A DNA stretch of 63,974 bases, filler included, from Sluysia triapertura (GCA_046118255.1; 4 parts of 4 records of this genome joined end to end with filler, not necessarily neighbours in it), one strand, 5' to 3'; shown: positions 21,828 through 36,858, counted from the whole stretch's first letter. Program-made: numbers and translations. The notes: generated from the letters alone by a model not told the origin.

Positions 21828-23675
21828 CTATAAGGATTGACTGTTCTCGCTACTACTTACTTTTTCTGATTTCAATTTTAAATAAGTGTTGCGATATCAA
21901 AATCCTAATCCAAAAAGTCCAATTAATCCTCCGGCACCAAGAACAATTAAAACAATTGCTCATGTTGGGAAAACATTAATTGAATTACTAGGATTTGGTT
22001 GTGGTGGGATAGGTTTTACTGGTATTATGTTTGTTCCACTTCCGTTTGTATTGTCTATTATTGGTTTTTCAGACATTTTACCAATTTGCAATAAATATTG
22101 AATTTTATTTCCTAATTTATCTTGAAGGGTTATTAGATATTTTCCGTGCCCAGTAATGCTACCACTGTTTTTAATTATATTGGTTGGTTTTCCTTTAAGA
22201 ATAATTTGTTTATTTACCATATCACAACTCTGATAAGTAGATGTTGTTAAATCTAAAATCGGGTCATGGAAAATATAGTTTAAATTAGGTGTGCCATTAT
22301 CTCCTTGGACAAATAAGAAATTAATATTTTCTTTCCCTCAGTTATAATAACCTAAATATTGTGTTAATTTGCAAGTTTTATCAGTAGAAAAATTATTTGT
22401 TCATGGATCAATTGATTTTTTAATGTAAAAATGATAGCTTAATGAAAGCCCGTTTGTTTTGGATACAACAATATTAAAAATGCCTTTGTTATCTTTGTTT
22501 GTTAGAATACAACTAAAATCACCGGCATTAATATAATCTTTCCCGTTTATGATAATTTTATTAATTGAACTATCATTTACATAAAATAAAATGTCATCAT
22601 TAATAAATTTATAGGTTTGCCCTTGGTATAAAGAATCCACTTCTTTTCCATTGGTTCTATATTTTACACCTGAAAAACCTTCATCTGTAGATTTTCACAA
22701 ACCATTGCTAGCTGTTCCTGCTAAAATGTCACCAGATTTATCCTGATAAAACGATGATATGCTTCAATTACTTTTAAGCCCATTTGTTATTTGAGTGAAA
22801 TCAACCCCATTAGTAGAATTTCATAAACCATTATAATCTGATCCTACTCATATATTTCCAGATTTATCCTGAATAATCGATTGTATGCTTCAATTATTAC
22901 CGATATTCCCATGAACTTGAGCGAAATTTAACCCATCAGTAGATTTATATAAACCATTATAATAAGTACTAGTTCATATATCCCCTTTATTATCTTGGAT
23001 AATTGAAACTATGTCTCAATTACTTCCGATCTTTCCATGAACCTGAGTGAAATTTACTCCATCATTTGATTTATATAAACCTTTTTTTTCTGTTCCTACT
23101 CAAACATTTCCTGCGTTGTCTTGAAAAATTGAATCTATATATCAATCACTTCCGATACCGCCATTAACTTTATTAAAATTTAATCCATCGGTAGATTTTC
23201 ATAGGCCATTACCAGCAGTAACAAATCAAATATTACCTAATAAATCTTGATAAATGCTATTGATTATTGCTGAATTACTTCCAATTCCTCAATCAACTAA
23301 GAAAAAATAGATTCCGTCAGTAGATTTTCATAAGCCATGATAATCTGTTCCTACTCATATATTTCCAGATTTATCCTGAATAATTGATTGTATACTTCAA
23401 TCACTTCCGATGCCGTCAGATACTTTATTGAAATTTACTCCATCAGTAGATTTTAATAAGCCGTTGTTTGTTGTCCCAACTCAAATATTACTTTTGTTAT
23501 CTTGAAAAGTAATATTTATAGCTCAATTACTTCCAACCCCTCCAGCAACTTTATTAAAAGTGAAATCTGTTTTTTTAGATGAATGTGGAGAAATGTTATA
23601 GATCGCTTGTATAATTGACCCAAAACAAAAAACCAAAATTCCTATCATTCATAAACTAGTTAATAACTTTTTCAT
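21828..23675 (-). CDS. Beta-propeller surface protein, copy 1 (615 aa)
   Basis: AGGAG RBS; signal MKKLLTSLWMIGILVF; seven WxIxSIxQDKxGNIWVGTxxxGLWKSTDGxNF repeats; stalk; Pro-rich linker; TM WAIVLIVLGAGGLIGLFG. Confidence 0.9.
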
Positions 23676-23949
23676 ATTTACTCCTGTTATATCTTTTACA
23701 AATCAACCCATTATTTTTATGGATTTATAAAAAAAATAAAACATGAATAATTTTAAAATATTTTTGGTTTTTTATTAAATTTTTTTTCTATTTACTAACT
23801 ATTTACTAATTGCTTACTAATAATAAATTATGTTTTGTATGGTTTTTTATTGTCATAATTTTTAGTAAAATGTAGTATTACCGTTAATAAATTTATATGT
23901 TTTCCCTCGAAATGTAAATTATACTTACTTGTTCTTTGGTATCGTGCCC

Positions 23950-24957
23950 CTATATTGAATAATTTTCATCAGTATATTTGAAAAGCCCATGACCCCCGGT
24001 CACAACTCAAATATTTCCAACATTATCTTGATAAATTGATCGTATAGTTCAATCGTTTGCTAACCCTCCACTCACTTGAGTAAAATTCACTTCGTCTATA
24101 GATTTTCATAAACCATTTTGTTCTGATCCGACCCAAATATTTCCTAATTTATCCTGAAAAATTGAACATATGCTTAAATCACTTCCGATGCCCTCAGATA
24201 CTTTATTGAAATTTACTCCATAAGTAGATTTTCACAAGCCATTATGATTTGTCCCCACTCAAATATTTCCTAATTTATCTTGAAAAATTGAAGATATATA
24301 TCAATTACTTCCAACCCCTCCAGCTACCTGTGTAAAATTTTCACCATCAATAGATTTTCATAGGCCATTCATAAAAGTGCCCACTCAAATATTTCCTTTA
24401 TTATCTTGAGTAATTGAAAATATAACTAAATTTGTTCCAAATTCCCCACTCACTTGGGTAAAATTCACTCCGTTAGTAGATTTTCATAACCCGCCTTGAA
24501 TAGTCCCCACTCAAATATTCCCAGACTTATCTTGGATAATACTAGTTATTGTATAATTTTTAAAATAACCACATATATCAAAACTATTTCCCCCATTAGT
24601 AGATTTTCATAAACCATTCGCAAATGTACCAACTCAAATATTTCCTATTTTATCTTGAAAAATTAAGTATATACCAATATTAGTTCCTAACCCATTAGTT
24701 ATTTGAATAAAATGATTTCCCCCGTCAGTAGATTTATATAAACCATGTAAAAGAGTACCAACTCAAATATTTCCATCTTTATCTACTAAAGTAGAATTAA
24801 TTTGAATATTTGTTCCTATCCCACCATCTACTTTAGCAAAATTAAAATTTATTGTTTTTAAATTTTGTGAAATACTATTATAAGTAGCTTGAGTAATTGT
24901 CCCTGCCCCAAAACTTAAAATTCCTATCATTCCTAAACTAGTTAATCATTTTTTCAT
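23950..24957 (-). CDS. Beta-propeller protein, copy 2 (335 aa): signal + 7 blades only, stalk and anchor lost
   Basis: Frame ends at TAG right after blade 7 (HGLFKYTDENYSI*); out-of-frame stalk remnant GKTYKFINGNTTFY at ~23860-23945. Confidence 0.8.
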
Positions 24958-25056
24958 ATTTCTCCTTTGGAAATTATATTTTTAAATATGTATTATTATT
25001 AATAAAACATATGAATTATATATATTTTTAATATCAAAACAAGATTATATTTATAT

Positions 25057-25080
25057 AAAAAAAATAACCTTGCGGTTATT
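25057..25080 (-). terminator. Rho-independent terminator downstream of copy 3
   Basis: Minus strand AATAACC-GCAA-GGTTATT hairpin running into a T tract. Confidence 0.8.
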
Positions 25081-25295
25081 CTCAAATAAGATGCATTTTT
25101 TATATTTACAATTGTTTAGAACTTAAATTATTTTGAATCTTTTCTATAAACAGAAATAAATTTATCTATCGAGCAATTAGAAATAATTTTTTGTTTTGTT
25201 AATTTAAATTTTCATTAATAATAACAATATGAGATCAAATACTAATAATTTCTAAAGCTAATATATCTTATAAATAAGAATTATTATCACTTACA

Positions 25296-27101
25296 TTAGT
25301 TTTTCTCAGGTTTTTGTTTTTGATGAGTATTGCGATATCATAATCATCATCCTATTAATCCAATTAATGCTAAACCACCAAGAACAATTATTATAATTGC
25401 TCATACTGGGAAGGTGTTTGGAATAGTTTTTGGTATGTCAGGAACTAGTGTGCTTCCGTCATTACTTTTATCCCCAGCTTTTGGTATAACTGGCTTATCA
25501 GTTGTATGTCCTATTTGTAATAAATATTGAATGTTATTTCCTAATTTATCTTGAATAGTTATTAAATATAAACCATAAACTAGGGCAAGATTTCCTGCTT
25601 TCTGTAGATTGGTTGGCGTACCTACAGCAAGAATTTTGCCATTTTCAAATGTACACTTTTGATAAATGGAATTTGTTAAATCTAAAATTGGGTCATCTAA
25701 AGTATATTTTAGATTTGGCATACCATTGTCCCCTTGAACAAATAAAAAATTAATACTATCTTTCCCTCAATTGTATTGACCTAAATACTGGGTTAGTTTG
25801 TAAGCACTATCTATGGAAAATTGATTTGTAGAAGGGTCGATTGATTGTTTGATGTAGAAATAATAGCTTAATAAAAAACCACTTGTTTTTGTTACTACGA
25901 TAGTAAAAATACCTTTATTTTCTTTACTTGTTAATACATATTTAAAATCAGTAACATTAGTATGATCTACACCATTAATAGTGATTTTATTAACCTCACT
26001 ATTTTTTGAATAAAATGTAGTATCGCCATTAATAAATTTATATGTTTGCCCTTGAAATATAGATTCTACTTCTTTTGCTCCTTTGGTATCATACCCTATA
26101 CCTGAATAATTTTCACTAGTTGATTCTCACAAACCATGATTTCTTGTTCCCACTCAAACATTTCCCACATTGTCTTGAATAATTGAATCTATATATCAAT
26201 CACTGCCGATACCACCATTAACCTTATTAAAATTTAATCCATCAGTAGATTTTCATAAACCATTTTTATCACTTCCTAACCATATATTTCCGAACCTATC
26301 TTGAAAAATTCAGAATATATTTCAATTATTTCCTATCCCGCCATTTACTTGGGTAAAATTTACTCCATTAGTAGATTTTCAAAGACCATTCTGAACAACC
26401 CCAGCTCATATATTTCCGGATTTATCTTGAATAATTGAGTATATATCTCAACTACTTAATAACCCACCACTAACTTGGGTAAAATTTACTCCATCTGTAG
26501 ATTTTCATAAACCATTATTGCCGGTTCCAACTCATATATTTCCAGATTTATCTTGAATAATTGAGTATATAATTCAATTATTTCCTATTCCACCATTAAC
26601 TTGACTAAAATTTGTTCCATCACTAGATTTTCACAAACCATTAAAACTTGTTCCCACTCAAATATTCCCTTTATTATCTTGAAAAATATTAATAATATAT
26701 CCGATATTATTTCCAACAATTACTTTGGTAAAATTTACTCCATCTGTGGATTTTCATAAACCATTACTGTTGGTTGCAACTCATATATTTCCAGATTTAT
26801 CTTGAATAATTGATAATATACTTCAATTAATTTCTAACCCGCCATTTACTTGGGTAAAATTTACTCCATTAGTAGATTTTCATAAACCATTTTTTTCAGT
26901 CCCTACTCAAAGAGTTCCGTTTTTATCTTGAAAAGTAGAATATATTGATCAATTACTTTCAATGCCGCCACCAATATTTGTAAAAGTAAAATTTACATCC
27001 TTTAAAGATTGTGAAACAATATTATAAGTAGCTTGAGTAATAGTTCCCACACCAAAACTTAAAATTCCTATCATTCCAAAACTAGCTAATAATTTTTTCA
27101 C
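25296..27101 (-). CDS. Beta-propeller surface protein, copy 3 (601 aa, GTG start)
   Basis: MKKLLASFGMIGILSFGVGTITQATYN; seven blades; stalk; TM; tail WWLWYRNTHQKQKPEKN*. Confidence 0.9.
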
Positions 27102-27145
27102 ATTTATTCCTAAATATTTTTTTATTATCTTTATACACTATTCTA

Positions 27146-27151
27146 ATTATA
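27146..27151 (-). promoter_or_regulatory. Putative -10 box (TATAAT) for copy 3
   Basis: AGAGTATAATT, conserved with the upstream region of copy 6. Confidence 0.5.
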
Positions 27152-27394
27152 CTCTTTGCTGCGTTTACTAACTATTTATTGAGTAATTAATTATATTTTT
27201 GTTTATTAATTTTAATTACTCAATAATAATTATTAAATAGTTATAAATAGGCATTGTAGTTAAAATAACTATAATGCCAAGAAATTATGCCTTGTTTTAT
27301 ATGATTTATAAAACTGAATAAAGCTATTTATATGAAATCAAATACTAATAATTTCTAAAGCTATTATGGATTATAGAAATTATTATCACTTACA

Positions 27395-29206
27395 TTAGTG
27401 TTTCTCAGGTTTTTGTTCTTGACGAGTTTTGCGATATCAGAATCATCATCCTATTAATCCAATTAATGCTAAACCACCAAGAATAATTATTATAATGGCT
27501 CATACTGGGAAGGCATTGGAAATAGTTTTTCCAGGAACTAGTTGGTCTCCGCTGTCATTTTTATCATTATCCCTTGGTATAACTGGTTTATCGGTAGATT
27601 TAGCAATTTGTAATAAATACTGAATTTTATTTCCTAGTTTATCTTGAATAGTAATTAAATATAATCCATAACCAGCAATCATTCCAGGTTGCACTAGATT
27701 AATTGGTTTCCCTACAACAAGAATTTTGCCATTTTCAAATGTACAATCTTGATAAGTTGAATTTGTTAAATCTAAAATTGGGTCATTTAAAGTATATTTT
27801 AGACTTGGAATACCAGTATCACCTCGGAGGAATAAAAAATTAATGTTATCTTGCCCTCAATCATATTTACCTGAATATTGTGCTAAAGTATTTGGGGAAT
27901 CAGCAAAAAATGCATTTGTTGATGGATCGATCGCTTGTTTAATATAAAAATAATAACTTAATGTAAGTTTATTTGTTTTTGTTACAACGATAGTAAAAAT
28001 ACCTTTGTCTTCTTTGCTTGTTAAAGTATATTTAAAATCACTAACATCAGTATAGTCTTTCCCATTTATGGTAATTTTATTAACCTGACTATTTTTTGAG
28101 TAAAAATCAGTATTACCATTAATGAATTTATATGTTTGACCATTAAATACAGATTCAACTTCTTTTGCCCCTCTAGTATCGTACCCCACCCCAACAAAAC
28201 TTTCATCAATTGATTCTCATAAACCGTTGTCTTTAGTACTAACTCAAATATCTCCGTCTTTATCTTGATAAAGTGATGCTATATTTCATTGGTTTCCTAA
28301 CCCACCACCAACTAGATTAAAATTCACTCCATCAGTAGATTTTCATAAACCATTTAGAGCTGTCCCGAATCATATGTCTCCTATTTTATCTTGTAAAATT
28401 GTATCTACATAAATCTCACTAGGTAAATTTCCTCCTGTAAATATTTTAAAATTTACTCCATCGGTAGATTTTCATAAACCATATATGCCTGCCCCAACTC
28501 AAATATTCCCGGCCTTATCTTGGTAAAGTTCTACTATATTTCAACTACTTCCGATTCCTCCACCAACTTTGTTAAAACTTATTCCTCCATTAGTTGTTTT
28601 AAATAGTCCATTTCGTTCTGTCCCAACTCAAATATTTCCAGTTTTATCTTGAAACACCATATTTATATTTCAATTACTTCCAATGATTCCATTACTAATT
28701 ATTTGTGTAAAATTCAATCCATCAGTAGATTTTCATAGACCATTACCTCAAGTTGAGACTCAAATATTTCCGGCTTTATCTTGAAATAATGATTGTATAT
28801 CCCAATTACTCCCGATTCCCCCACCAACTTTGGTAAAATTTACACCATTGCCAGATTTTCATAAACCTTCAGAAAAGGTTGCCACTCAAATATTGCCAAA
28901 TGTATCAATAATAGCTGAATATATATTTCAATTACTTCCGATTCCCCCGCCTACTTGGGTAAAATTCACTCCATTAGTAGATTTTCATAAACCATTCTTT
29001 CATGTTCCTACTCATATAGTTCCGGACTTATCTTGCAAAGTAAATCTTATATTTCAATTACCCCCAATTCCCCCGCCTACTGATTTAAAAGTAAAATTTA
29101 TATCTTTTAAAGATTGGGAAACAATATTATAAGTGGCTTGGGTAATTGTTCCTACGCCAAAACTTAAAATACCTATGATGCTCATGTTAGATAATAATTT
29201 CTTCAT
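27395..29206 (-). CDS. Beta-propeller surface protein, copy 4 (603 aa)
   Basis: AGGAG RBS; MKKLLSNMSIIGILSFGVG; same architecture; start and stop in frame. Confidence 0.9.
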
Positions 29207-29214
29207 ATTGCTCC

Positions 29215-29520
29215 TAATATTATTTATTATACTTGGTTTTTTAATAGTATTTTCCCCTCTATTACTGTTCTATTTCAAATAAATAATTTCTTTTTTGATA
29301 TTAAAATGAATGATTTTAAATGTGTTTTAAAATTTAAATTTTTATTGTTAATCATACATGGATAATTAACATAAAACTTACAATAATAGTTAAAGTTAAA
29401 ATAACTAGAATTACAAAAGTAATTACTGTAATTATTTAAATAATTAATAGAACCGATGAAACTATCTATATAAGATCAAAACCAATAATTTCTAAAGCTA
29501 TTATGGATTATAGAAATTAT
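29215..29520 (-). pseudogene. Frameshifted remnant of the small membrane gene at 31348-31767
   Basis: Shared blocks AGTTAAAATAACTAGAATTA, TTTTAAAATTTAAATTTTTATT and GATATTAAAAT; FVILVILT segment followed by stops. Confidence 0.65.
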
Positions 29521-29531
29521 TATTAGTTATA

Positions 29532-31334
29532 TTAGTTTTTCACGGATTTTTGTTTTTGATGAGTATTACGATATCACAATCATCATCCTATTAATCCGAT
29601 TAATACTGACCCACCAAGAACAATTATCACAATGGCTCACACCGGGAAGGAATTAGCAGTAGGTTTTGCAGGTAATATTGTTGTTCCGTTTTCGTTTTTA
29701 GATACTACTGGTTTATCAGTTGTTTTACCAATTTGTAATAAATATTGAATTTTATTTCCTAATTTATCTTGAATAGTTATTAAATATAAACCATGACCTG
29801 GGGCAATGCTTCCAGGATTATTTGCTAGATTAGTTGGCTTTCCTACAACAAGAATTTTTCCATTTTCAAACGTACATTCTTGATAAGTGGAATTCGTTAA
29901 ATCTAAAATTGGATCATTTAAGGTATATGTTAGATTTGGTGTACCTTTATCCCCTTGAAGAAATAAAAAATTAATGTTATCTTGCCCTCAATCGTATACA
30001 ACTGAATATTGAGATAACTTATAATTATTGTCAGTAGAAAAGATATTTGTTGACGGATCAATTGTTTTTTTAATGTAAAAATAATAGTTCAATGTAAGAT
30101 TATTTGTTTTGGTTACAACAATATTAAAAATACCTTTATTTTCTTTATTTGTTAAAGTATATTTAAAATCAGCAACATTAGTATGATCTTTCCCATTTAT
30201 CGTAATTTTATTAACTGAACTATTTTTTGAGTAAAATGTAGTATCACTATTGATAAATTTATATGTTTGCCTTTGAAATGTGGATTCTACTTCTTTTCCT
30301 CCATTGGTATTGTACCCTACACCCGAAAAACCTTCATCGGTAGATTTTCATAAACCATAGGATTGTGTTGATACTCAAATATCTCCAACATTATCTTGAT
30401 AAATTGAATTTATACCTCAATTAATTGCTAATCCTCCGCTAACTTGGGTAAAATTTACTCCATCTGTAGATTTTCATAAACCCTTATTCGTTGCAAATCA
30501 AATGTTGCCAATTTTATCTTGGCAAATTAAATATATGAAAGAAATACTACCAATATTCCCGGTAATTTTGTTAAATGTTTTTCCATCATCTATAGACTTT
30601 CATAAACCATTACCCGTAACTCCTACTCATATATTTCCGGTCTTATCTACACATATACTATCTATGCTTCAATTGATTTCAATACCTCCACTAACTTGTA
30701 TAAAATTTATTCCATCAGTAGATTTTCAAAGACCATTCATAGAAGTCCCTACTCAGTAATTACCTTTATTATCCTGAGTAATTGGAGTTATGTCTCAGCC
30801 ACTACTTGCACTAGAGCCCACATTTACTCGTTCAAAAGTTTTTCCATCATCTGATTTATATAAACCGTGCCCACTAGTTCCAACTCAAATATTTCCTAAT
30901 TTATCTTGAAACAAGTAATTTACATTCCAACTGGTTACTAATCCGCTACCTATTTGAGTGAAAGTTACTCCATCATTAGTTGATTTTCATAAACCATTAT
31001 CTCGCGTGCCAACTCAAATATTACCTAACTTATCTTGAAGCATTGTTTGTATATGTCAATCTTTACCTATTAGACCGGTTATTTGTGTAAAATTCACTCC
31101 ATCAGTAGATTTTCATAAACCTTTTCCGCCAGGGGCAACTCAAATATTCCCTAACTTATCTTGAAAAGTAAAAATTATTCTTCAACTACTTTCAATACCA
31201 CCACTAACTTGCGTAAAAGTAAAATTTATATCTTTTAGAGTTTGAGAAACAATGTTATAAGTGGCTTGGGTAATTGTTCCTACGCCAAAACTTAAAATAC
31301 CCACCATTCCCAAACTAGCTAATATTTTTTTCAT
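29532..31334 (-). CDS. Beta-propeller surface protein, copy 5 (600 aa)
   Basis: AGGAG RBS; MKKILASLGMVGILSFGVG; same architecture; absent from the ORF track because of frequent TGA-Trp. Confidence 0.9.
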
Positions 31335-31347
31335 ATTTACTCCTACA

Positions 31348-31767
31348 CTATTTACTTATTATATTTAGTTCTTCATTATATTTTTTTACTTGATATCATT
31401 CTTCTCCAAATAAATAATGTTCTTTCTGAATATTAAAATAAGTTCTTTGAAATCTATTTTTAAAATTTAAATTTTTATTTTTTAATCATTCATTAATAAT
31501 CAATACAGCACTTATAATGGCCATTATAGTTAAAATAACTAGAATTATAAAAGGAATTGGTATAGTACTTAATGGATTATAGAAGCTTGTAAAAACATCT
31601 GTATTAACCAATAAACTAATAAACGCTAAAATTATAAAGTTTGCTATTACAAACCGAATATAAAAGAAAATTCAAACATATTTAATTTTGTATTTAAAAA
31701 ATGTATTAATAGTGAATTTAATAGGATAATAAAAAATGTATTTTAATATCTTAAATATTATTGACAT
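31348..31767 (-). CDS. Small membrane protein (139 aa in code 4), 2-3 TM, immediately upstream of copy 5
   Basis: MSIIFKILKYIFYYP...PFIILVILTIMAIISAVLIINEWLKNKNLNF...NIISK*; stop abuts the RBS of copy 5. Confidence 0.7.
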
Positions 31768-31981
31768 ATATCTTATTTTACAACTTTTTACTTAGTGTAT
31801 TTTAGAGTTATTTATTTTATTTATCATATAAACAATTATTTATTCAATAAATTAACTAATAATGATATATTACTCTAGTAATATCATAACTAACTCAACA
31901 CATTTAACATTTTTCAATATAGTTAATTATTTATTTTTGCAACTTAATTAACTAACTTTGTTAATTTAAAATATTTTGTTC

Positions 31982-33820
31982 TTATAAATGAGAATTTTTA
32001 TTTTTACTATAAGTGTTTTCTTGATTTTGTTTTTTATGAGAACGGCGATAAAACAGCAATCATCATATTAAACCAATTAATGCTATGCCACCAAGAACAA
32101 TCAATACAATTGCCCACACTGGGAAGGTATTATTGGAAACAGGTTTTGGTATATCTGGGGATACCGGCTCTGGGGGGTTATTTTTATCCTCAGGGTTAGG
32201 TATAACTGGCTTATCGGTGGTTTTCCCAATTTGTAATAAATATTGAATTTTATTTCCGATTTTATCTTGAATAGTTACTAGATATAAACCATAACCTGGG
32301 GCAATGCTTCCAGTTTGCATTAGATTAGTTGGTTTCCCTACGGCAAGAATTTTGCCATTTTCAAATGTGCAACTTTGATAAGTAGAATTCGTTAAATCTA
32401 AAATTGGGTCATTTAAAATATATTTTAGACCCGGCGAGCCACTATCTCCTTGGAGGAATAAAAAATTAATGTTATCTTGCCCTCAATCATATTTACCTGA
32501 ATATTGTGCTAAATTATTTTGGGATTCAGTAGAAAAGACATTTGTTGCTGGGTCAATCGCTTTTTTAATGTAAAAATAATAGTTTAATGAAAGGCCATTT
32601 GTTTTGGATACAACAATATTAAAAATACCATTGTTTTCTTTGTTTGTTAATGTATAGTTAAAATCACCAGTATTAGCATGATCTTTCCCATTTATTGTAA
32701 TTTTATCAATTGTACTATTCTTTACATAAAATTTAGCATCGTCACTTATAAATTTATATGTTTGACCCTGATATGTGGATTCTATTTCTTTTCCTGAGGT
32801 AGTGTATCCAACTCCAGTAAAATTTTCGTCTGTAGATTTTCACAAACCCTCATTCATTGTTCCTACTAATATATTATCTTTATTGTCTTGATAAATAGAA
32901 TATAGCATCCAATCATTTCCGATTCCTCCACCAACTTGGGTAAAATTTGTTCCATCCGTAGATTTTCATAGGCCTTTGACACCTGTTCCGACTCACAAGA
33001 ATCCCATTTTATCTTGAAATATTGAGAATATGGTTTCTGTAGCTGGTATTCCGCTAGTTACTTTGGTAAAAGAATTTCCCCCATTAGTAGATTTTCATAA
33101 GCCATCCTCTGATCCGACCCAAATATTTCCTAATTTATCCTGAAAAAGTGATTTTATAGTTAATTTACTTGTTATCCCACCACTAACTTGAGTAAAATTT
33201 ACACCATTAGTAGATTTTCATAGGCCTTTGTTATTTATTCCTGCCCACATATTTCCATTTTTATCTTGAAGCAAACTATTTATCGGTCAACCGATTCCTA
33301 TTTCAAAGCCAACTTGAAAAAAATCAGAGCCTCCATTAGTAGATTTTCATAAGCCATTATTGGCTGTTCCAATAAATATATGCTCATTTTGATTTATATA
33401 TAAGCTTTGTATGCTTCAATCTAATCCTATCATCTTGCCAACTTGGGTAAAATTCACTCCATCAGTAGATTTTCACAAACCATTACCTTGAGTACCCACT
33501 CATAAATTACCCGTTTTATCTTGACATAGATTTGAAATATTTCAATCCTTCCCAATTCCTCCACCAACTTGGGTAAAATTAACTCCGTCAGTAGATTTTC
33601 ATAAACCGTTACTAATAGTTGCAACTCAAATATTTCCATTTTTATCTTGAAAAATATTATATATTGTTCATTTACTTCCGATTCCCGCAGATACTTTATT
33701 AAAAGTAAAATTTACATCCTTTAAAGATTGCGAAACAATATTGTAAGTAGCTTGAGTAATTGTCCCAACACTAAAACTTAGGATTCCTATCATTCCTAAA
33801 CTAGTTAATCATTTTTTCAT
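31982..33820 (-). CDS. Beta-propeller surface protein, copy 6 (612 aa)
   Basis: AAGGA RBS; MKKWLTSLGMIGILSFSVG; seven blades; stalk; linker IPNPEDKNNPPEPVSPDIPKP; TM. Confidence 0.9.
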
Positions 33821-33864
33821 AGTCATCCTTAAATATTTTTTATTATCTTTAATAATCTATTTTA

Positions 33865-33870
33865 ATTATA
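33865..33870 (-). promoter_or_regulatory. Putative -10 box (TATAAT) for copy 6
   Basis: AGAGTATAATT about 45 nt upstream of the start codon. Confidence 0.5.
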
Positions 33871-33910
33871 CTCTTCGTTATATTTGACTAACTATTTACT
33901 TAGGAATTAA

Positions 33911-34906
33911 TTATATTTTTGTTGACTTTTTTTGATCGTCAAACTTATCATATGCCTTAACTATTTCTTTAACAAGTGGATTACGAACAATATCTCCTTC
34001 TGTTAATTTAACTAACTTAATGCTCTTAACATTTTTTAATATATTTAATGCGGATAACAATCCAGAAACGACATTAAATTTTAAATCTATTTGAGTAATA
34101 TCCCCTGTAATAACCATTTTGCTATTAAATCCAAGTCTTGTTAAAAATAATTTCATTTGATTAAAATTACTATTTTGGGCTTCATCTAAAATTACAAAGC
34201 AATTATCAAATGTTCTTCCGCGCATAAAGGCAAGGGGGGCTATTTCAATAACATTTGTTTTTAATAAATTCTCAGTTTTTTCTTTTCCTAGAATAAAATA
34301 CAAAGAATCATATAAAGGAATCAAATAAGGGTCAATTTTTTCTTTTAATCCACCTGGTAAGAATCCTAACTCTTCTCCTGCTTCGATAGCTGGTCTAGAT
34401 AAAATAATTTTTTTAATTAAGTTACTTTTAAGCATCTCGATTGCATAAACCATTGCAATAAATGTTTTCCCAGAACCAGCCGGTCCAATACAAAAAATTA
34501 ATTCATTGTTTTGTAATATATTTAAATATTCAACTTGTCCTAATGTTTTAGGATAAATTTTTCGACCCTCATAATTTGATGTAATTGGCTTTTCATATAG
34601 CTCTTTTATTTCATCTTTTTTATCATCTTCTAGTATATTTTTGTTATTTGAACATAAATAATTAATATCTCATGAACGAATTTTATTAGATTTATCTTTA
34701 TTTGATATATCTATTAATGTTTTTATAATAGAAAGTACTTTTTTAGCTTTCTCTTCACTATCAGCATTAATAATAATGTATGATGGTTGAATTTCTATGA
34801 ATGTATTTGTTTTTTCTTCTAATAGATTAATGTTTCGGTTATTAACACCAACTACATTAGTAATATTTTGAATTATTGGGTCTATATTATATTTAAATGG
34901 TTTCAT
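33911..34906 (-). CDS. phoH: PhoH-like ATPase, 331 aa in code 4
   Basis: GPAGSGKT, RPAIEAGEELGFLPG, LAFMRGRT, ILDEAQN, GDITQIDL; joined through TGA at 34670. Confidence 0.97.
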
Positions 34907-34920
34907 TGGTTTATTTTTCC

Positions 34921-36858
34921 TTAAGATATATTATTTTTATTTTTTTCTATCTCTTTTTTTATGTGCGAATTTTTATTAGCTTCGCTTCTAGTATTTTTAA
35001 AACTCCTTTTTAAAACATTAGCAAAAAAGAATGCTCCACCTTTAACACGCATCTTGTTTCCGAAAACTTTAAGCATAACTTTTCCTCTTCCTGAAAGAAT
35101 ATCTTTTAAAGAATTACTGTAGGTTCAGACAAAATAAGTTGATTCTAATGCTTTTTCAAAGGTCATTTCTTTTAAAACTGCAAATTTAGCTCCTAAATGC
35201 ATTTGAAAATTATATTTCTCATCAAGTGTAAAGCCAATTGTTTTATTAATATATTTAGGATAAGGCTCATAGTTTTCAACCATAAATACTAATATTTCTT
35301 TTGCATTTAAATGGTCAATTGCTGAATATTCATTACTTTTAATTTTTACATCTAGCGCCGATGTAACAAAACTTGTTGTTAGGAAAATACTATTTCCTCT
35401 TATTCCTGGGTATCCATCAATTGATGCTATTAAGGCATTTTTATAAATTGTTTCAAATGATCTTTTTTCTAAACTATAATTAACAGTTGCCGGAATGCCA
35501 TAAACATTACCTTTTTCTCTACCAATTTTATCGTTTATTAATTTTGATGTATAAACCTTGCAATATGTTATGTAAGTAGATAATAATGGGAACAAGGCAA
35601 TTATTCTTCCTTTAACGTATTTTTCTATTTCTTCTACTTTTTGGTTATTTATATTTTCTAAAACATCATATATTTTAATAACAAATGAGCCAGTTTTAAG
35701 TGGATTATCTGAATAGATGCTATTCATATTGTAGATATATAAGGGACTTTTTTTATAACCATATTGTGTTATTTTTTCAATGATTTTTTTTGTACCTTCT
35801 CAATTCATCCCATCATAAACTGTGTAGATAGGTTCATGAATATTAAAGATCCCTAAATTTTTACTTACACCTAAATGGATGATGATTTCTGAAATTGCTT
35901 TCTCTTGTTCATTAATGATTTTTTTATATTCCAATAATGATTTATCTTTGGAAGTAAATTTTTCTAGACTATCTTGAATTGAATTAGCAAAAATATATTT
36001 TGATCCTTTATATACAAAGTTTTTTAATTTATCATCATTTTTTTTATCACAATATATATTGGTTATATTATTCCCAGAATTTTTAACTTTAACCACTTCT
36101 TGGTTTAATTTTAATGTACCTTCTAATTGATGAATTTTATTTTCTAACGATTTTAACAAAGCATTAGTATAGTTTTTTACATAATGAAATCCACCAATTA
36201 AATAATGAGATAAGTTATATAGAAATGATTTTATTTCTAATTTATCATATGATAATCCGAAAAATGGTCAAAATATTTCAAAAAATCATAGTACAGAAAT
36301 ATCATTATGAAAATAATTCATTAAGAATTCTTCAACTGTTGGATATTTTTGAAATTCTGGAATATTGTATTTATAATCAACCCTAATTGATTTTAAAATG
36401 CCAAAAAAACTATCTATTTGTTGCGATACAAGCGGATGCTTTCTTTTTAATATTGATCCAATCATTTTTCAATCATTTGGAAAAATTATCCGATCTTTAT
36501 TATTTTGGAAAACTAACATCGTTTTAGATTTAAAATAATTAACATTTTCTAATTGAAGGCTATCTAATACACTATATGCAAATGAAGAAAGTGATAAATC
36601 AATAGGTACTCAATTATCAAAAATGTATGTTTGGTTATTAATGAATTCTGTTTGTGTATATAAATAACCTCCAACACTTTCATTTTTATCTATTAAGATT
36701 GTTGATTCTTTTCTAGTTAATAAAAATATTGTTGTTAGTAACCCTGAAAGACCACCACCAATAACTATGTTTTTAAAACTTCGCTTATCTGATTTTTTAA
36801 TTTTAGATTCTTTTTTTACTTTTCTTTTGTCCTGAACTTCTTCTATTTCATATATCAT
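34921..36858 (-). CDS. FAD-dependent oxidoreductase (phytoene desaturase-like) with a putative C-terminal SCP2 lipid-binding domain, 645 aa in code 4
   Basis: IVIGGGLSGL...IDKNESVGG Rossmann fold; HYLIGGFHY; GNVYG; three ORF pieces in one frame; C-terminal SFKDILSG...VFGNKMRVKG resembles SCP2. Confidence 0.7.

What the first reader, a model, noticed from the sequence alone, without database searches (positions are those of the whole stretch)
21828..33820. Hidden tandem array of six seven-bladed beta-propeller surface proteins in a Mollicute
Seen: with TGA=Trp there are six co-oriented paralogs. Each has an N-terminal signal without a shared lipobox and exactly seven ~43-aa repeats (WxIxSIxQDKxGNIWVGTxxxGLWKSTDGxNF) in the copies counted (1, 2, 3, 6). 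Five also have a ~200-aa conserved stalk, a Pro-rich linker, one TM helix and a short basic tail. The standard-code track misses them because the repeats are rich in TGA-Trp. Known: QDxxGNIWVGT matches two-component-regulator propeller (Reg_prop) repeats and KSTDG/STNGGxxF matches Asp-box/BNR repeats. The M. genitalium P110/P140 and M. pneumoniae P1 adhesins also combine a seven-bladed propeller with a C-terminal TM, but I see no sequence similarity to them. Inference: an expanded and possibly undescribed adhesin or ligand-binding family of an invertebrate-associated Mollicute. No kinase domain is attached, so these are not sensor kinases.
Basis: partly seen in the sequence, partly recalled or inferred. 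Interest (0 to 1): 0.9.

Follow-up and report, generated by a model that had tools for sequence, protein, structure and literature searches.

The report
Mollicute propeller surface-adhesin gene array
Six tandem genes, readable only when TGA is taken as tryptophan, belong to a family of about 20 membrane-anchored seven-bladed propeller proteins in an unsequenced wall-less bacterium hidden in a eukaryote assembly; they are distant relatives of the Spiroplasma 'sarpin' adhesins that attach to and enter insect cells, so this is a new branch of a known kind.

Summary
With TGA=Trp, 21828-33820 (minus strand) carries six co-oriented paralogs. Each has a signal peptide and exactly seven ~42-aa blades. 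Five also have a ~205-aa stalk, a variable Pro-rich linker, one TM helix and a short basic tail. Copy 5 is a truncated derivative with a decayed stalk remnant behind its stop.

The blades pass Pfam Reg_prop, match the seven-bladed propellers of Bacteroides hybrid sensors, and carry an Asp-box-like turn. The stalk models as two Ig-like beta-sandwiches with no Pfam, PDB or fold relative.

The family is larger than six: 21-22 stalk matches on 15 or more contigs of the same 619-Mb assembly, one beside a Rep3 plasmid-type initiator.

It is not an orphan. The family HMM aligns over signal peptide, propeller and stalk with plasmid-borne 'hypothetical' proteins of the Spiroplasma ixodetis clade. The blade HMM scores 54 bits on the seven sarpin repeats of a S. 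citri ScARP adhesin, which themselves hit Reg_prop. ScARPs have the same layout, and their repeat domain is shown experimentally to drive adhesion and entry into leafhopper cells.

Best reading: a compact, chromosomally expanded branch of the sarpin/ARP adhesin superfamily. Function is inferred. The propeller could not be folded here.

The parts
31982..33820 (-). Copy 1, 612 aa: signal peptide, 7 blades (blade 3 divergent), two-domain stalk, Pro-rich linker, TM, basic tail
   Evidence: Table-4 ORF and translation; blades; hydropathy; Reg_prop 21.9 bits on 33098-33217
31348..31767 (-). Small 139-aa ORF with two hydrophobic helices and three TGA-Trp codons, between copies 1 and 2; probably part of the original duplication unit
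   Evidence: 90%-identical copy upstream of a paralog on contig C253495, plus two weaker copies. Decayed remnants upstream of copies 3 and 4
29532..31334 (-). Copy 2, 600 aa, full architecture
27395..29206 (-). Copy 3, 603 aa, full architecture; reference copy for the stalk models
27860..28216 (-). Copy 3 stalk domain 1 (TGA-free piece, 119 aa): nine-strand beta-sandwich
   Evidence: AlphaFold2 on 21-sequence alignment A3, pLDDT 84.5. Only generic Ig/FN3/CBM-like matches, Z <= 5.9. No Pfam, NCBIfam or PDB sequence hit
27572..27856 (-). Copy 3 stalk domain 2 (95 aa): Ig-like beta-sandwich ending in the conserved G-x-Y-L-x-T-I-Q-D-K-L-G-N motif
   Evidence: AlphaFold2 on A4, pLDDT 86.9. Ig-V/Big_2/PKD-like matches only, Z <= 6.1, TM 0.5-0.6. 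No PDB sequence hit
25296..27101 (-). Copy 4, 601 aa, GTG start, full architecture; most regular blades (126-bp period x 6.7, 74% matches)
23950..24957 (-). Copy 5, 335 aa: signal peptide and 7 blades only, ending at a premature stop at the propeller/stalk junction
   Evidence: Reg_prop 23.1 bits on 24109-24231
23860..23949 (-). Frameshifted remnant of the start of copy 5's stalk (K-T-Y-K-F-I-N-G-N-T-T-F-Y), followed by a deletion of the rest
   Evidence: Three-frame translation of the copy5-copy6 spacer
21828..23675 (-). Copy 6, 615 aa, full architecture; most divergent stalk and tail

Best explanation
The array encodes type I surface proteins of a wall-less, TGA-recoding Mollicute-type bacterium whose contigs lie inside a eukaryote assembly. 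Each protein is exported by an N-terminal signal peptide, probably cut after T-Q-A, and held in the membrane by one C-terminal helix with a short Lys/Arg tail inside the cell. Outside the cell it carries one rigid seven-bladed beta-propeller of Reg_prop type (with an Asp-box-like turn in every blade) on two Ig-like sandwich domains and a variable Pro-rich linker.

The proteins are a compact branch of the sarpin / adhesion-related-protein superfamily of Spiroplasma. By analogy with ScARP3d, the propeller most likely binds a host-cell surface molecule and mediates attachment, and possibly uptake. The roughly 20 diverged paralogs would then give a repertoire of specificities or antigenic types.

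Shown here: the genes, the genetic code, the repeat count, the domain layout, purifying selection, the family size, and homology to the S. ixodetis-type proteins and to sarpin repeats. Inferred: the closed propeller, surface exposure, signal-peptide cleavage, and adhesion with its ligand.
For: Architecture and code.

Reg_prop blades: Pfam above cut-off on single blades. The blade profile hits the seven-bladed Bacteroides hybrid sensor propellers 3v9f (1.4e-15), 4a2l (1.7e-14) and 3ott (7e-10).

Stalk: two confident beta-sandwich models.

Functional constraint: NG86 dN/dS of 0.17-0.42 in the signal peptide, propeller, stalk and TM+tail regions, and 0.88 only in the linker. Propeller identity is 56% against 67-74% for the stalk. 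Variability concentrates at a few loop positions of the blade.

Family size: 22 and 21 matches on 15 or more contigs, in two subfamilies.

Homology:
- The window HMM aligns to the 917-aa protein of genome G427 over HMM positions 1-535, E 1.5e-47.
- A 15-sequence stalk HMM scores 27-38 bits on the S. ixodetis-type post-propeller region, against a maximum of 9 in 1000 shuffles. Those proteins also end in a TM helix and a KR tail.
- The blade HMM scores 54.4 bits on the S. citri pSci4 ScARP, against a maximum of 7.7 in 1000 shuffles and 2.2 on the reversed sequence.
- That ScARP has seven 39-40 aa repeats and hits Reg_prop at 57.6 bits.

Published function: ScARPs consist of a signal peptide, 6-8 sarpin repeats, a conserved region, a variable region, a TM helix and a KR tail (PMC2386487). 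The ScARP3d repeat domain is surface-exposed and triggers entry into leafhopper cells (PMC3485318). S. eriocheiris ALP, described as SARP1-like, binds EGF-domain host proteins (PMC5266718).

Mobile-element link, as for the pSci plasmids: one paralog lies next to a Rep3 initiator.
Against:
- The propeller itself was never folded, because every copy has TGA inside and tools take no read-through.
- The central region of S. citri ScARPs is not detectably similar to the window stalk (3.7 bits; 13 of 1000 shuffles reach it). Homology to the experimentally studied adhesins therefore rests on the repeat domain and the shared layout.
- The repeat-domain match could reflect a common ancient propeller type (Reg_prop is widespread) rather than a shared adhesin ancestor.
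- The window blades carry an Asp-box turn that S. citri sarpin repeats lack.
- The host is unknown.
- Some of the 21-22 matches may be fragments of the same genes or strain variants in a fragmented assembly.
Confidence: 0.6

Rival explanations
1. Structural surface coat. The many paralogs form a dense S-layer-like or glycocalyx-like protein layer that protects a wall-less cell, with no specific host ligand.
For: The family is large and abundant, with 21-22 matches. The scaffold is rigid and highly regular, with blades about 52% identical to each other. An archaeal S-layer protein with a YVTN propeller plus a PKD domain (1l0q) appears among the fold matches of stalk domain 2, Z 5.0.
Against: The relatives with experimental data act as adhesins and invasins (PMC3485318). 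Paralogs diverge most in the propeller loops and the linker, which fits recognition better than lattice packing. The 1l0q match is within the generic Ig-like background.
Confidence: 0.13
2. Antigenic-variation or decoy family. The main role is immune or defence evasion by switching among paralogs, as with mycoplasma Vsp/VlhA families, rather than binding as such.
For: Tandem arrays occur at several loci, with a decayed copy 5 and decayed accessory ORFs. The linker is close to neutral, dN/dS 0.88. DNA-level blade repeats could recombine.
Against: No invertible elements and no long homopolymer or dinucleotide tracts at the 5' ends. Every copy has its own start and upstream spacer. Promoter and terminator scans are uninformative in this AT-rich DNA.
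Confidence: 0.12
3. Extracytoplasmic sensors. A Reg_prop propeller plus an Ig-like domain and a TM helix mirrors the periplasmic part of Bacteroides hybrid two-component sensors, with the signal passed to a separate partner.
For: The best solved matches are hybrid sensor ectodomains. The order propeller, Ig-like domain, TM helix is the same.
Against: The cytoplasmic tail is only 12-21 residues with no domain. No HisKA, HATPase or receiver domain lies in or next to the genes. About 20 paralogous sensors is implausible in a reduced genome. The stalk models do not retrieve the Y_Y_Y domain of 4a2l or 3v9f.
Confidence: 0.05
4. Glycoside hydrolases or sialidase-like enzymes of the BNR/Asp-box propeller type.
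For: GH74 xyloglucanases are hit at 1e-6 to 1e-3. A propeller relative groups with BNR/Sortilin/Ycf48-type clusters in the Atlas feature search, 0.91-0.93.
Against: The GH74 matches cover only the 11-residue Asp-box turn (profile positions 1-12). The proteins have a single 300-aa propeller with 42-aa blades, not the paired GH74 propellers or a sialidase six-blade with catalytic Arg triad. No glycosidase Pfam family is hit.
Confidence: 0.03

Closest known systems
Spiroplasma citri/kunkelii adhesion-related proteins (SARP1/P89, ScARP2a-5a, SkARP1) with the 'sarpin' repeat domain
   Same: Cleavable signal peptide; six to eight (here seven) tandem 39-42 aa repeats that match Pfam Reg_prop; a conserved region, then a variable region, one C-terminal TM helix and a short Lys/Arg-rich tail; multigene family; association with plasmid-type replicons for at least one paralog. 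The blade HMM scores 54.4 bits on a pSci4 ScARP (PMC2386487, PMC3485318).
   Different: The window stalk is about 205 aa (two Ig-like domains), against a central region of about 330 aa plus a variable region of about 110 aa, and is not detectably similar to it. The window blades carry a K-S-T-D-G Asp-box turn and Trp at three positions, which S. citri repeats lack. The array is chromosomal, between phoH and era. The organism is far from Spiroplasma (DnaG 42%).
Plasmid-borne 'hypothetical proteins' of the Spiroplasma ixodetis clade (for example WP_286642880.1 on pSIXOD1; homologs in S. ixodetis of Homona and the Spiroplasma of Drosophila atripex)
   Same: Homologous over signal peptide, seven G-L-W-K-S-T-D-G-type blades and the stalk, with a C-terminal TM helix and KR tail. 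These are the closest full-length relatives found.
   Different: They are 890-920 aa, with an extra region of about 300 residues, helical by its sequence character (not modelled), between stalk and TM. They are plasmid-borne, in few copies, and unannotated and unstudied.
Periplasmic sensor domains of Bacteroides hybrid two-component systems (BT4663 4a2l, 3v9f, BT4673 3ott)
   Same: Reg_prop blades. These are the best solved-structure matches (1e-15 to 1e-10), with seven-bladed propellers followed by an Ig-like domain and a TM helix.
   Different: They have two propellers per chain, a Y_Y_Y domain, and cytoplasmic kinase, receiver and AraC modules. None of these is present here.
Mycoplasma genitalium P110/P140 and M. 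pneumoniae P1/P40-P90 adhesins
   Different: No sequence match to any of their solved chains with the blade or stalk profiles at E <= 1-5. Those proteins are much larger, with irregular propellers and a crown domain.
Hepatoplasmataceae propeller proteins (for example BDV02923.1)
   Same: Invertebrate-gut Mollicutes with 7-10 paralogs that have an N-terminal seven-bladed propeller followed by Ig-like folds, proposed to act in host interaction (PMC10928387).
   Different: They are described as RCC1-like, 991 aa, with four Ig-like folds. No sequence link was testable here.

Membership tests
Sarpin / ScARP adhesion-related proteins (Spiroplasma) | N-terminal cleavable signal peptide | tested here: met
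   M-K-K start, hydrophobic core and T-Q-A before residue 25 in copies 1-5; a hydrophobic N-terminal window in copies 2, 4 and 6. No dedicated signal-peptide predictor was available.
Sarpin / ScARP adhesion-related proteins (Spiroplasma) | 6-8 tandem sarpin repeats of 39-42 aa | tested here: met
   Seven repeats of 41-44 aa in all six copies. The blade HMM scores 54.4 bits on a pSci4 ScARP against 7.7 at most in 1000 shuffles. Both hit Reg_prop.
Sarpin / ScARP adhesion-related proteins (Spiroplasma) | Central conserved region of about 330 aa shared by ScARPs | tested here: not met
   The window stalk is about 205 aa. The stalk HMM scores 3.7 bits on the ScARP central region (13 of 1000 shuffles reach it) and -3.1 on the DUF3688-annotated ScARP4a-type protein.
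Sarpin / ScARP adhesion-related proteins (Spiroplasma) | C-terminal TM helix with a short Lys/Arg-rich cytoplasmic tail | tested here: met
   One C-terminal hydrophobic segment (KD 2.4-2.8) and a 12-21 aa tail with 4-5 K/R in the five long copies.
Sarpin / ScARP adhesion-related proteins (Spiroplasma) | Adhesion to or entry into host (insect) cells through the repeat domain | not testable with these tools
   Shown for ScARP3d (PMC3485318). No data for these genes.
S. ixodetis-type propeller-stalk proteins (unnamed) | Colinear homology over signal peptide, propeller and stalk | tested here: met
   HMM positions 1-535 aligned at E 1.5e-47. The stalk alone scores 27-38 bits against at most 9 in shuffles.
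Pfam Reg_prop (PF07494) propellers | Repeats scoring above the gathering cut-off | tested here: met
   21.9 and 23.1 bits on single TGA-free blades, cut-off 20.4. Multi-blade matches to 3v9f and 4a2l.
Hybrid two-component sensors (HTCS) | Y_Y_Y domain plus cytoplasmic HisKA/HATPase/receiver/HTH modules | tested here: not met
   No such Pfam hits. The tail is 12-21 aa.
GH74 / BNR-Asp-box glycosidases | Catalytic propeller pair or catalytic residues beyond the Asp-box turn | tested here: not met
   Matches are confined to profile positions 1-12. No glycosidase family is hit.
P1/P110/P140 cytadhesins | Sequence similarity to the solved adhesin chains | tested here: not met
   Absent from the PDB profile searches with blade and stalk profiles.

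The most novel reading that the evidence does not exclude
These genes and their S. ixodetis-type relatives would show that the long-known 'sarpin' adhesin repeats of Mollicutes are seven-bladed Reg_prop/Asp-box propellers on Ig-like stalks. A deep-branching, still unsequenced Mollicute lineage living in a eukaryote host would have expanded a compact form into its main host-recognition repertoire (about 20 genes). The family would be diversifying through blade-level recombination and spreading on Rep3-type replicons.
Probability: 0.25. Interest if true: 0.6.

Novelty: new variant of a known kind. Interest (0 to 1): 0.45.

Why it matters
The finding gives a structural reading of a Mollicute adhesin class studied since 2001: sarpin repeats are blades of a single Reg_prop-type propeller. 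No paper in the searched library mentions both 'sarpin' and 'propeller'.

It extends that class beyond plant-pathogenic Spiroplasma to a divergent symbiont and to the S. ixodetis clade.

It also shows how a whole surface-protein repertoire disappears when symbiont contigs inside a host assembly are read with the standard code.

The compact, very regular propellers, with blades about 52% identical to each other, would be convenient for binding and structural work on how wall-less symbionts recognise host cells.

Tried and rejected
- Orphan family. I first believed this and then rejected it. A 5-sequence stalk profile found only one distant homolog (P0002) among 1.84 billion representatives. Pattern scans of GTDB genomes and JGI metagenomes found nothing. 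The stalk profile found nothing in 401 genomes of the order. tblastn of a stalk piece against plasmids found nothing. These were sensitivity limits: the blade profile then found relatives in 17 of 401 genomes, and a broader stalk HMM confirmed stalk homology to the S. ixodetis type.
- Specific fold relatives of the stalk. Foldseek against the PDB, VIA-align wide, and the ESM Atlas by shape and by features gave only generic Ig/FN3/CBM/PKD-like matches.
- Organism identification. PhoH reaches at most 57-62% identity. DnaG reaches at most 46% in 401 sampled genomes of the class and 42% to S. ixodetis. None of the named PhoH loci uses TGA=Trp. The lineage remains unnamed.
- Phase-variation signals. 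No invertible repeats or long simple tracts were found. The promoter and terminator scan was at background level.
- PF07494 on the whole 619-Mb assembly gave no hit at a genome-wide E-value. A 24-position model is too short at that scale.
- Long plus-strand ORFs under table 4 opposite the propellers (for example 26110-27027 and 32895-33746) are antisense shadows of the repeats, not genes.
Whole proteins with TGA could not be handed to any search or fold tool, so only TGA-free pieces were used there. Table-4 translations were used only in local scripts.

Full report
**The sequence and its setting**

The usable piece (13420-40740) is one 27.3-kb contig, C44349, of a 619-Mb assembly in 263,945 contigs. 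That size points to a eukaryote host assembly carrying bacterial contigs. The contig has 25% G+C. Under the standard code it yields 2,182 residues in ORFs of 150 aa or more; with TGA=Trp it yields 9,553.

Flanking genes are ordinary Bacillota/Mollicutes housekeeping genes: dnaG, recO, phoH, an AhpC-type peroxiredoxin and an MFS transporter by Pfam, plus ORFs I took for glyS and era without testing them. These genes also use TGA (9:1, 3:0 and 1:0 against TGG).

In the three Trp columns of the repeat, TGA alternates with TGG and with aromatic or Leu codons. So TGA is Trp, not Gly as in code 25.

No sequenced organism is close. PhoH reaches at most 57-62% identity. DnaG reaches at most 46% among 401 sampled genomes of the class and 42% to Spiroplasma ixodetis.

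**Checking the observation**

Six co-oriented minus-strand genes occupy 21828-33820. Each has 14-25 in-frame TGA codons, so the standard code breaks them into pieces of 139 aa or less.

All six have an M-K-K (or GTG-coded V-K-K) start, a hydrophobic leader ending in T-Q-A (I-Q-A in copy 6), and seven repeats of 41-44 aa. The 42 repeats align in one register, with consensus K-S-T-D-G-x-N-F-T-Q-V-x-G-G-I-G-S-x-W-x-I-x-S-I-x-Q-D-K-x-G-N-I-W-V-G-T-x-x-N-G-L-W. Tandem Repeats Finder sees the 126-bp period directly in the DNA at 67-80% matches.

Five copies continue with a conserved region of about 205 aa, a variable Pro-rich linker, one strongly hydrophobic segment and a 12-21 aa basic tail.

Copy 5 stops at the propeller/stalk junction. 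The spacer behind it still reads, in another frame, as the start of the stalk, after which the rest is deleted. Copy 5 is therefore a truncated derivative.

Between copies 1 and 2 lies an intact 139-aa ORF with two hydrophobic helices at 31348-31767. Decayed remnants of it precede copies 3 and 4. A 90%-identical copy precedes a paralog on another contig. The duplicated unit was probably a gene pair.

**What the domains are**

Tools here take no protein read through a stop, so only TGA-free pieces were submitted.

Blades:
- Single blades with a TGG Trp pass Pfam Reg_prop at 21.9 and 23.1 bits, cut-off 20.4.
- A 12-blade profile hits the seven-bladed sensor propellers of Bacteroides hybrid two-component systems: 3v9f at 1.4e-15, 4a2l at 1.7e-14 and 3ott at 7e-10, across many blades.
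- The same profile hits GH74 xyloglucanases, but only over the 11-residue Asp-box turn.

Stalk:
- The two halves have no Pfam, NCBIfam or PDB sequence relative.
- Using alignments of 21 and 17 paralog pieces, AlphaFold2 gives two confident all-beta sandwiches, pLDDT 84.5 and 86.9.
- Foldseek, VIA-align and the Atlas return only generic Ig/FN3/CBM/PKD-like matches, with Z of 6.1 or less.

The propeller itself could not be folded. Its closure is inferred from the seven Reg_prop repeats.

**Evolutionary behaviour**

- Paralogs are 56% identical in the propeller, 67% and 74% in the stalk domains, and 40% in the linker.
- Nei-Gojobori dN/dS is 0.17-0.42 in the signal peptide, propeller, stalk and TM+tail regions and 0.88 in the linker, with dS near saturation. 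The genes are old and under purifying selection.
- Blades are about 52% identical to each other whatever their copy or position, and 55.5% at the same position. This is unusually regular for a natural propeller.
- Entropy peaks at a few positions: after G-T, after the first Trp, and before G-G-I-G.

**Family size**

The stalk profiles find 22 and 21 matches on 15 or more contigs of the same assembly. They fall into two subfamilies with different leaders and TM segments. Other contigs also show tandem pairs. On C201707 a paralog follows a Rep3-type initiator and a second primase and precedes membrane proteins and an ATPase. This is a plasmid- or ICE-like setting.

**Relatives elsewhere**

At first the family looked orphan. 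A 5-sequence stalk profile found only one true relative in 1.84 billion representatives: P0002, from a 31%-GC TGA-recoding Logan contig that carries four divergent tandem paralogs. Pattern scans and a stalk search of 401 genomes of the order found nothing.

The blade profile, however, hit 17 of those 401 genomes. One of them is Spiroplasma ixodetis Y32. On its plasmid pSIXOD1 the 892-aa 'hypothetical protein' WP_286642880.1 is the match, and a neighbouring gene is already annotated 'two-component regulator propeller domain-containing protein'. Homologs are on plasmids of other S. ixodetis-clade symbionts.

The window-family HMM aligns colinearly with these proteins over signal peptide, blades and stalk, E 1.5e-47. 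A 15-sequence stalk HMM alone scores 27-38 bits, against at most 9 in 1000 shuffles. These proteins also end in a TM helix and a KR tail, after an extra ~300 residues.

**Link to a studied family**

A blade protein from another genome led to S. citri plasmid pSci4 and its 'adhesion related protein, transmembrane'. That ScARP has seven 39-40 aa sarpin repeats. The window blade HMM scores 54.4 bits on it, against at most 7.7 in shuffles and 2.2 on the reversed sequence. Pfam calls its repeat region Reg_prop at 57.6 bits.

The literature describes ScARPs as a signal peptide, 6-8 sarpin repeats of 39-42 aa, a conserved region of about 330 aa, a variable region of about 110 aa, a TM helix and a KR tail (PMC2386487). 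The ScARP3d repeat domain is surface-exposed and triggers adhesion and entry into leafhopper cells (PMC3485318). A SARP1-like protein of S. eriocheiris binds EGF-domain host proteins (PMC5266718).

The S. citri central region is not detectably similar to the window stalk. No paper in the searched library mentions both 'sarpin' and 'propeller'.

**Verdict**

This is a compact, Asp-box-bearing, chromosomally expanded branch of the sarpin/ARP superfamily in an unsequenced Mollicute lineage.

Adhesion is inferred from homology and layout, at about 0.6. A coat, antigenic-variation or sensor role remains possible.

Noticed in passing
window 31348-31767 (-): Intact 139-aa ORF with two hydrophobic helices and a basic tail between copies 1 and 2. 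A 90%-identical copy lies upstream of a paralog on C253495, and decayed remnants lie upstream of copies 3 and 4. Possibly an accessory partner of the propeller proteins.
   Followed up: partly
L104 (G000:C201707:1-10000), paralog at 4682-6586: A family member sits directly downstream of a Rep3_N/Rep3_C replication initiator and a second DnaG-type primase, and upstream of membrane proteins and a 710-aa ATPase-like ORF. This is a plasmid- or ICE-like context, reminiscent of ScARPs on pSci plasmids.
   Followed up: partly
L093 (Logan SRR31861032 contig, 6327 bp): A second TGA-recoding, 31%-GC organism carries four tandem, very divergent paralogs with the same propeller-stalk-TM layout (P0002 is one of them). 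Its source organism is unknown.
   Followed up: partly
L118-L120 (G602, 1.0-Mb genome, 31% GC): Another Mollicute genome has at least four loci with Reg_prop/DUF6242-type propeller proteins of 425-751 aa that score up to 204 bits with the window HMM but lack the stalk. Propeller surface proteins seem recurrent in the order (17 of 401 genomes).
   Followed up: partly
L122 (G420:C1), ORF 2678-3967: A lipoprotein-type protein (Cys after the leader) built of near-identical 46-aa blade-like repeats with two TGA-Trp codons each. This is a lipobox-anchored variant of the same blade type.
   Followed up: no
window 26110-27027, 28527-29132, 32895-33746 (+): Long plus-strand ORFs under table 4 with a recurring F-H-K-P motif lie exactly opposite the propeller repeats. 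They are antisense shadows of the repeat, not genes.
   Followed up: yes
window 21828-34930: The array sits between phoH and ORFs I took for era and recO, where Bacillus-type genomes carry pgpH-ybeY-dgkA. It may have been inserted into, or replaced part of, a conserved housekeeping cluster.
   Followed up: no
L124 (S. citri pSci4) 9962-12013: The repeat-less ScARP4a-type gene is annotated 'DUF3688 family protein'. The ScARP central region therefore already has a family name, and that family does not match the window stalk.
   Followed up: partly
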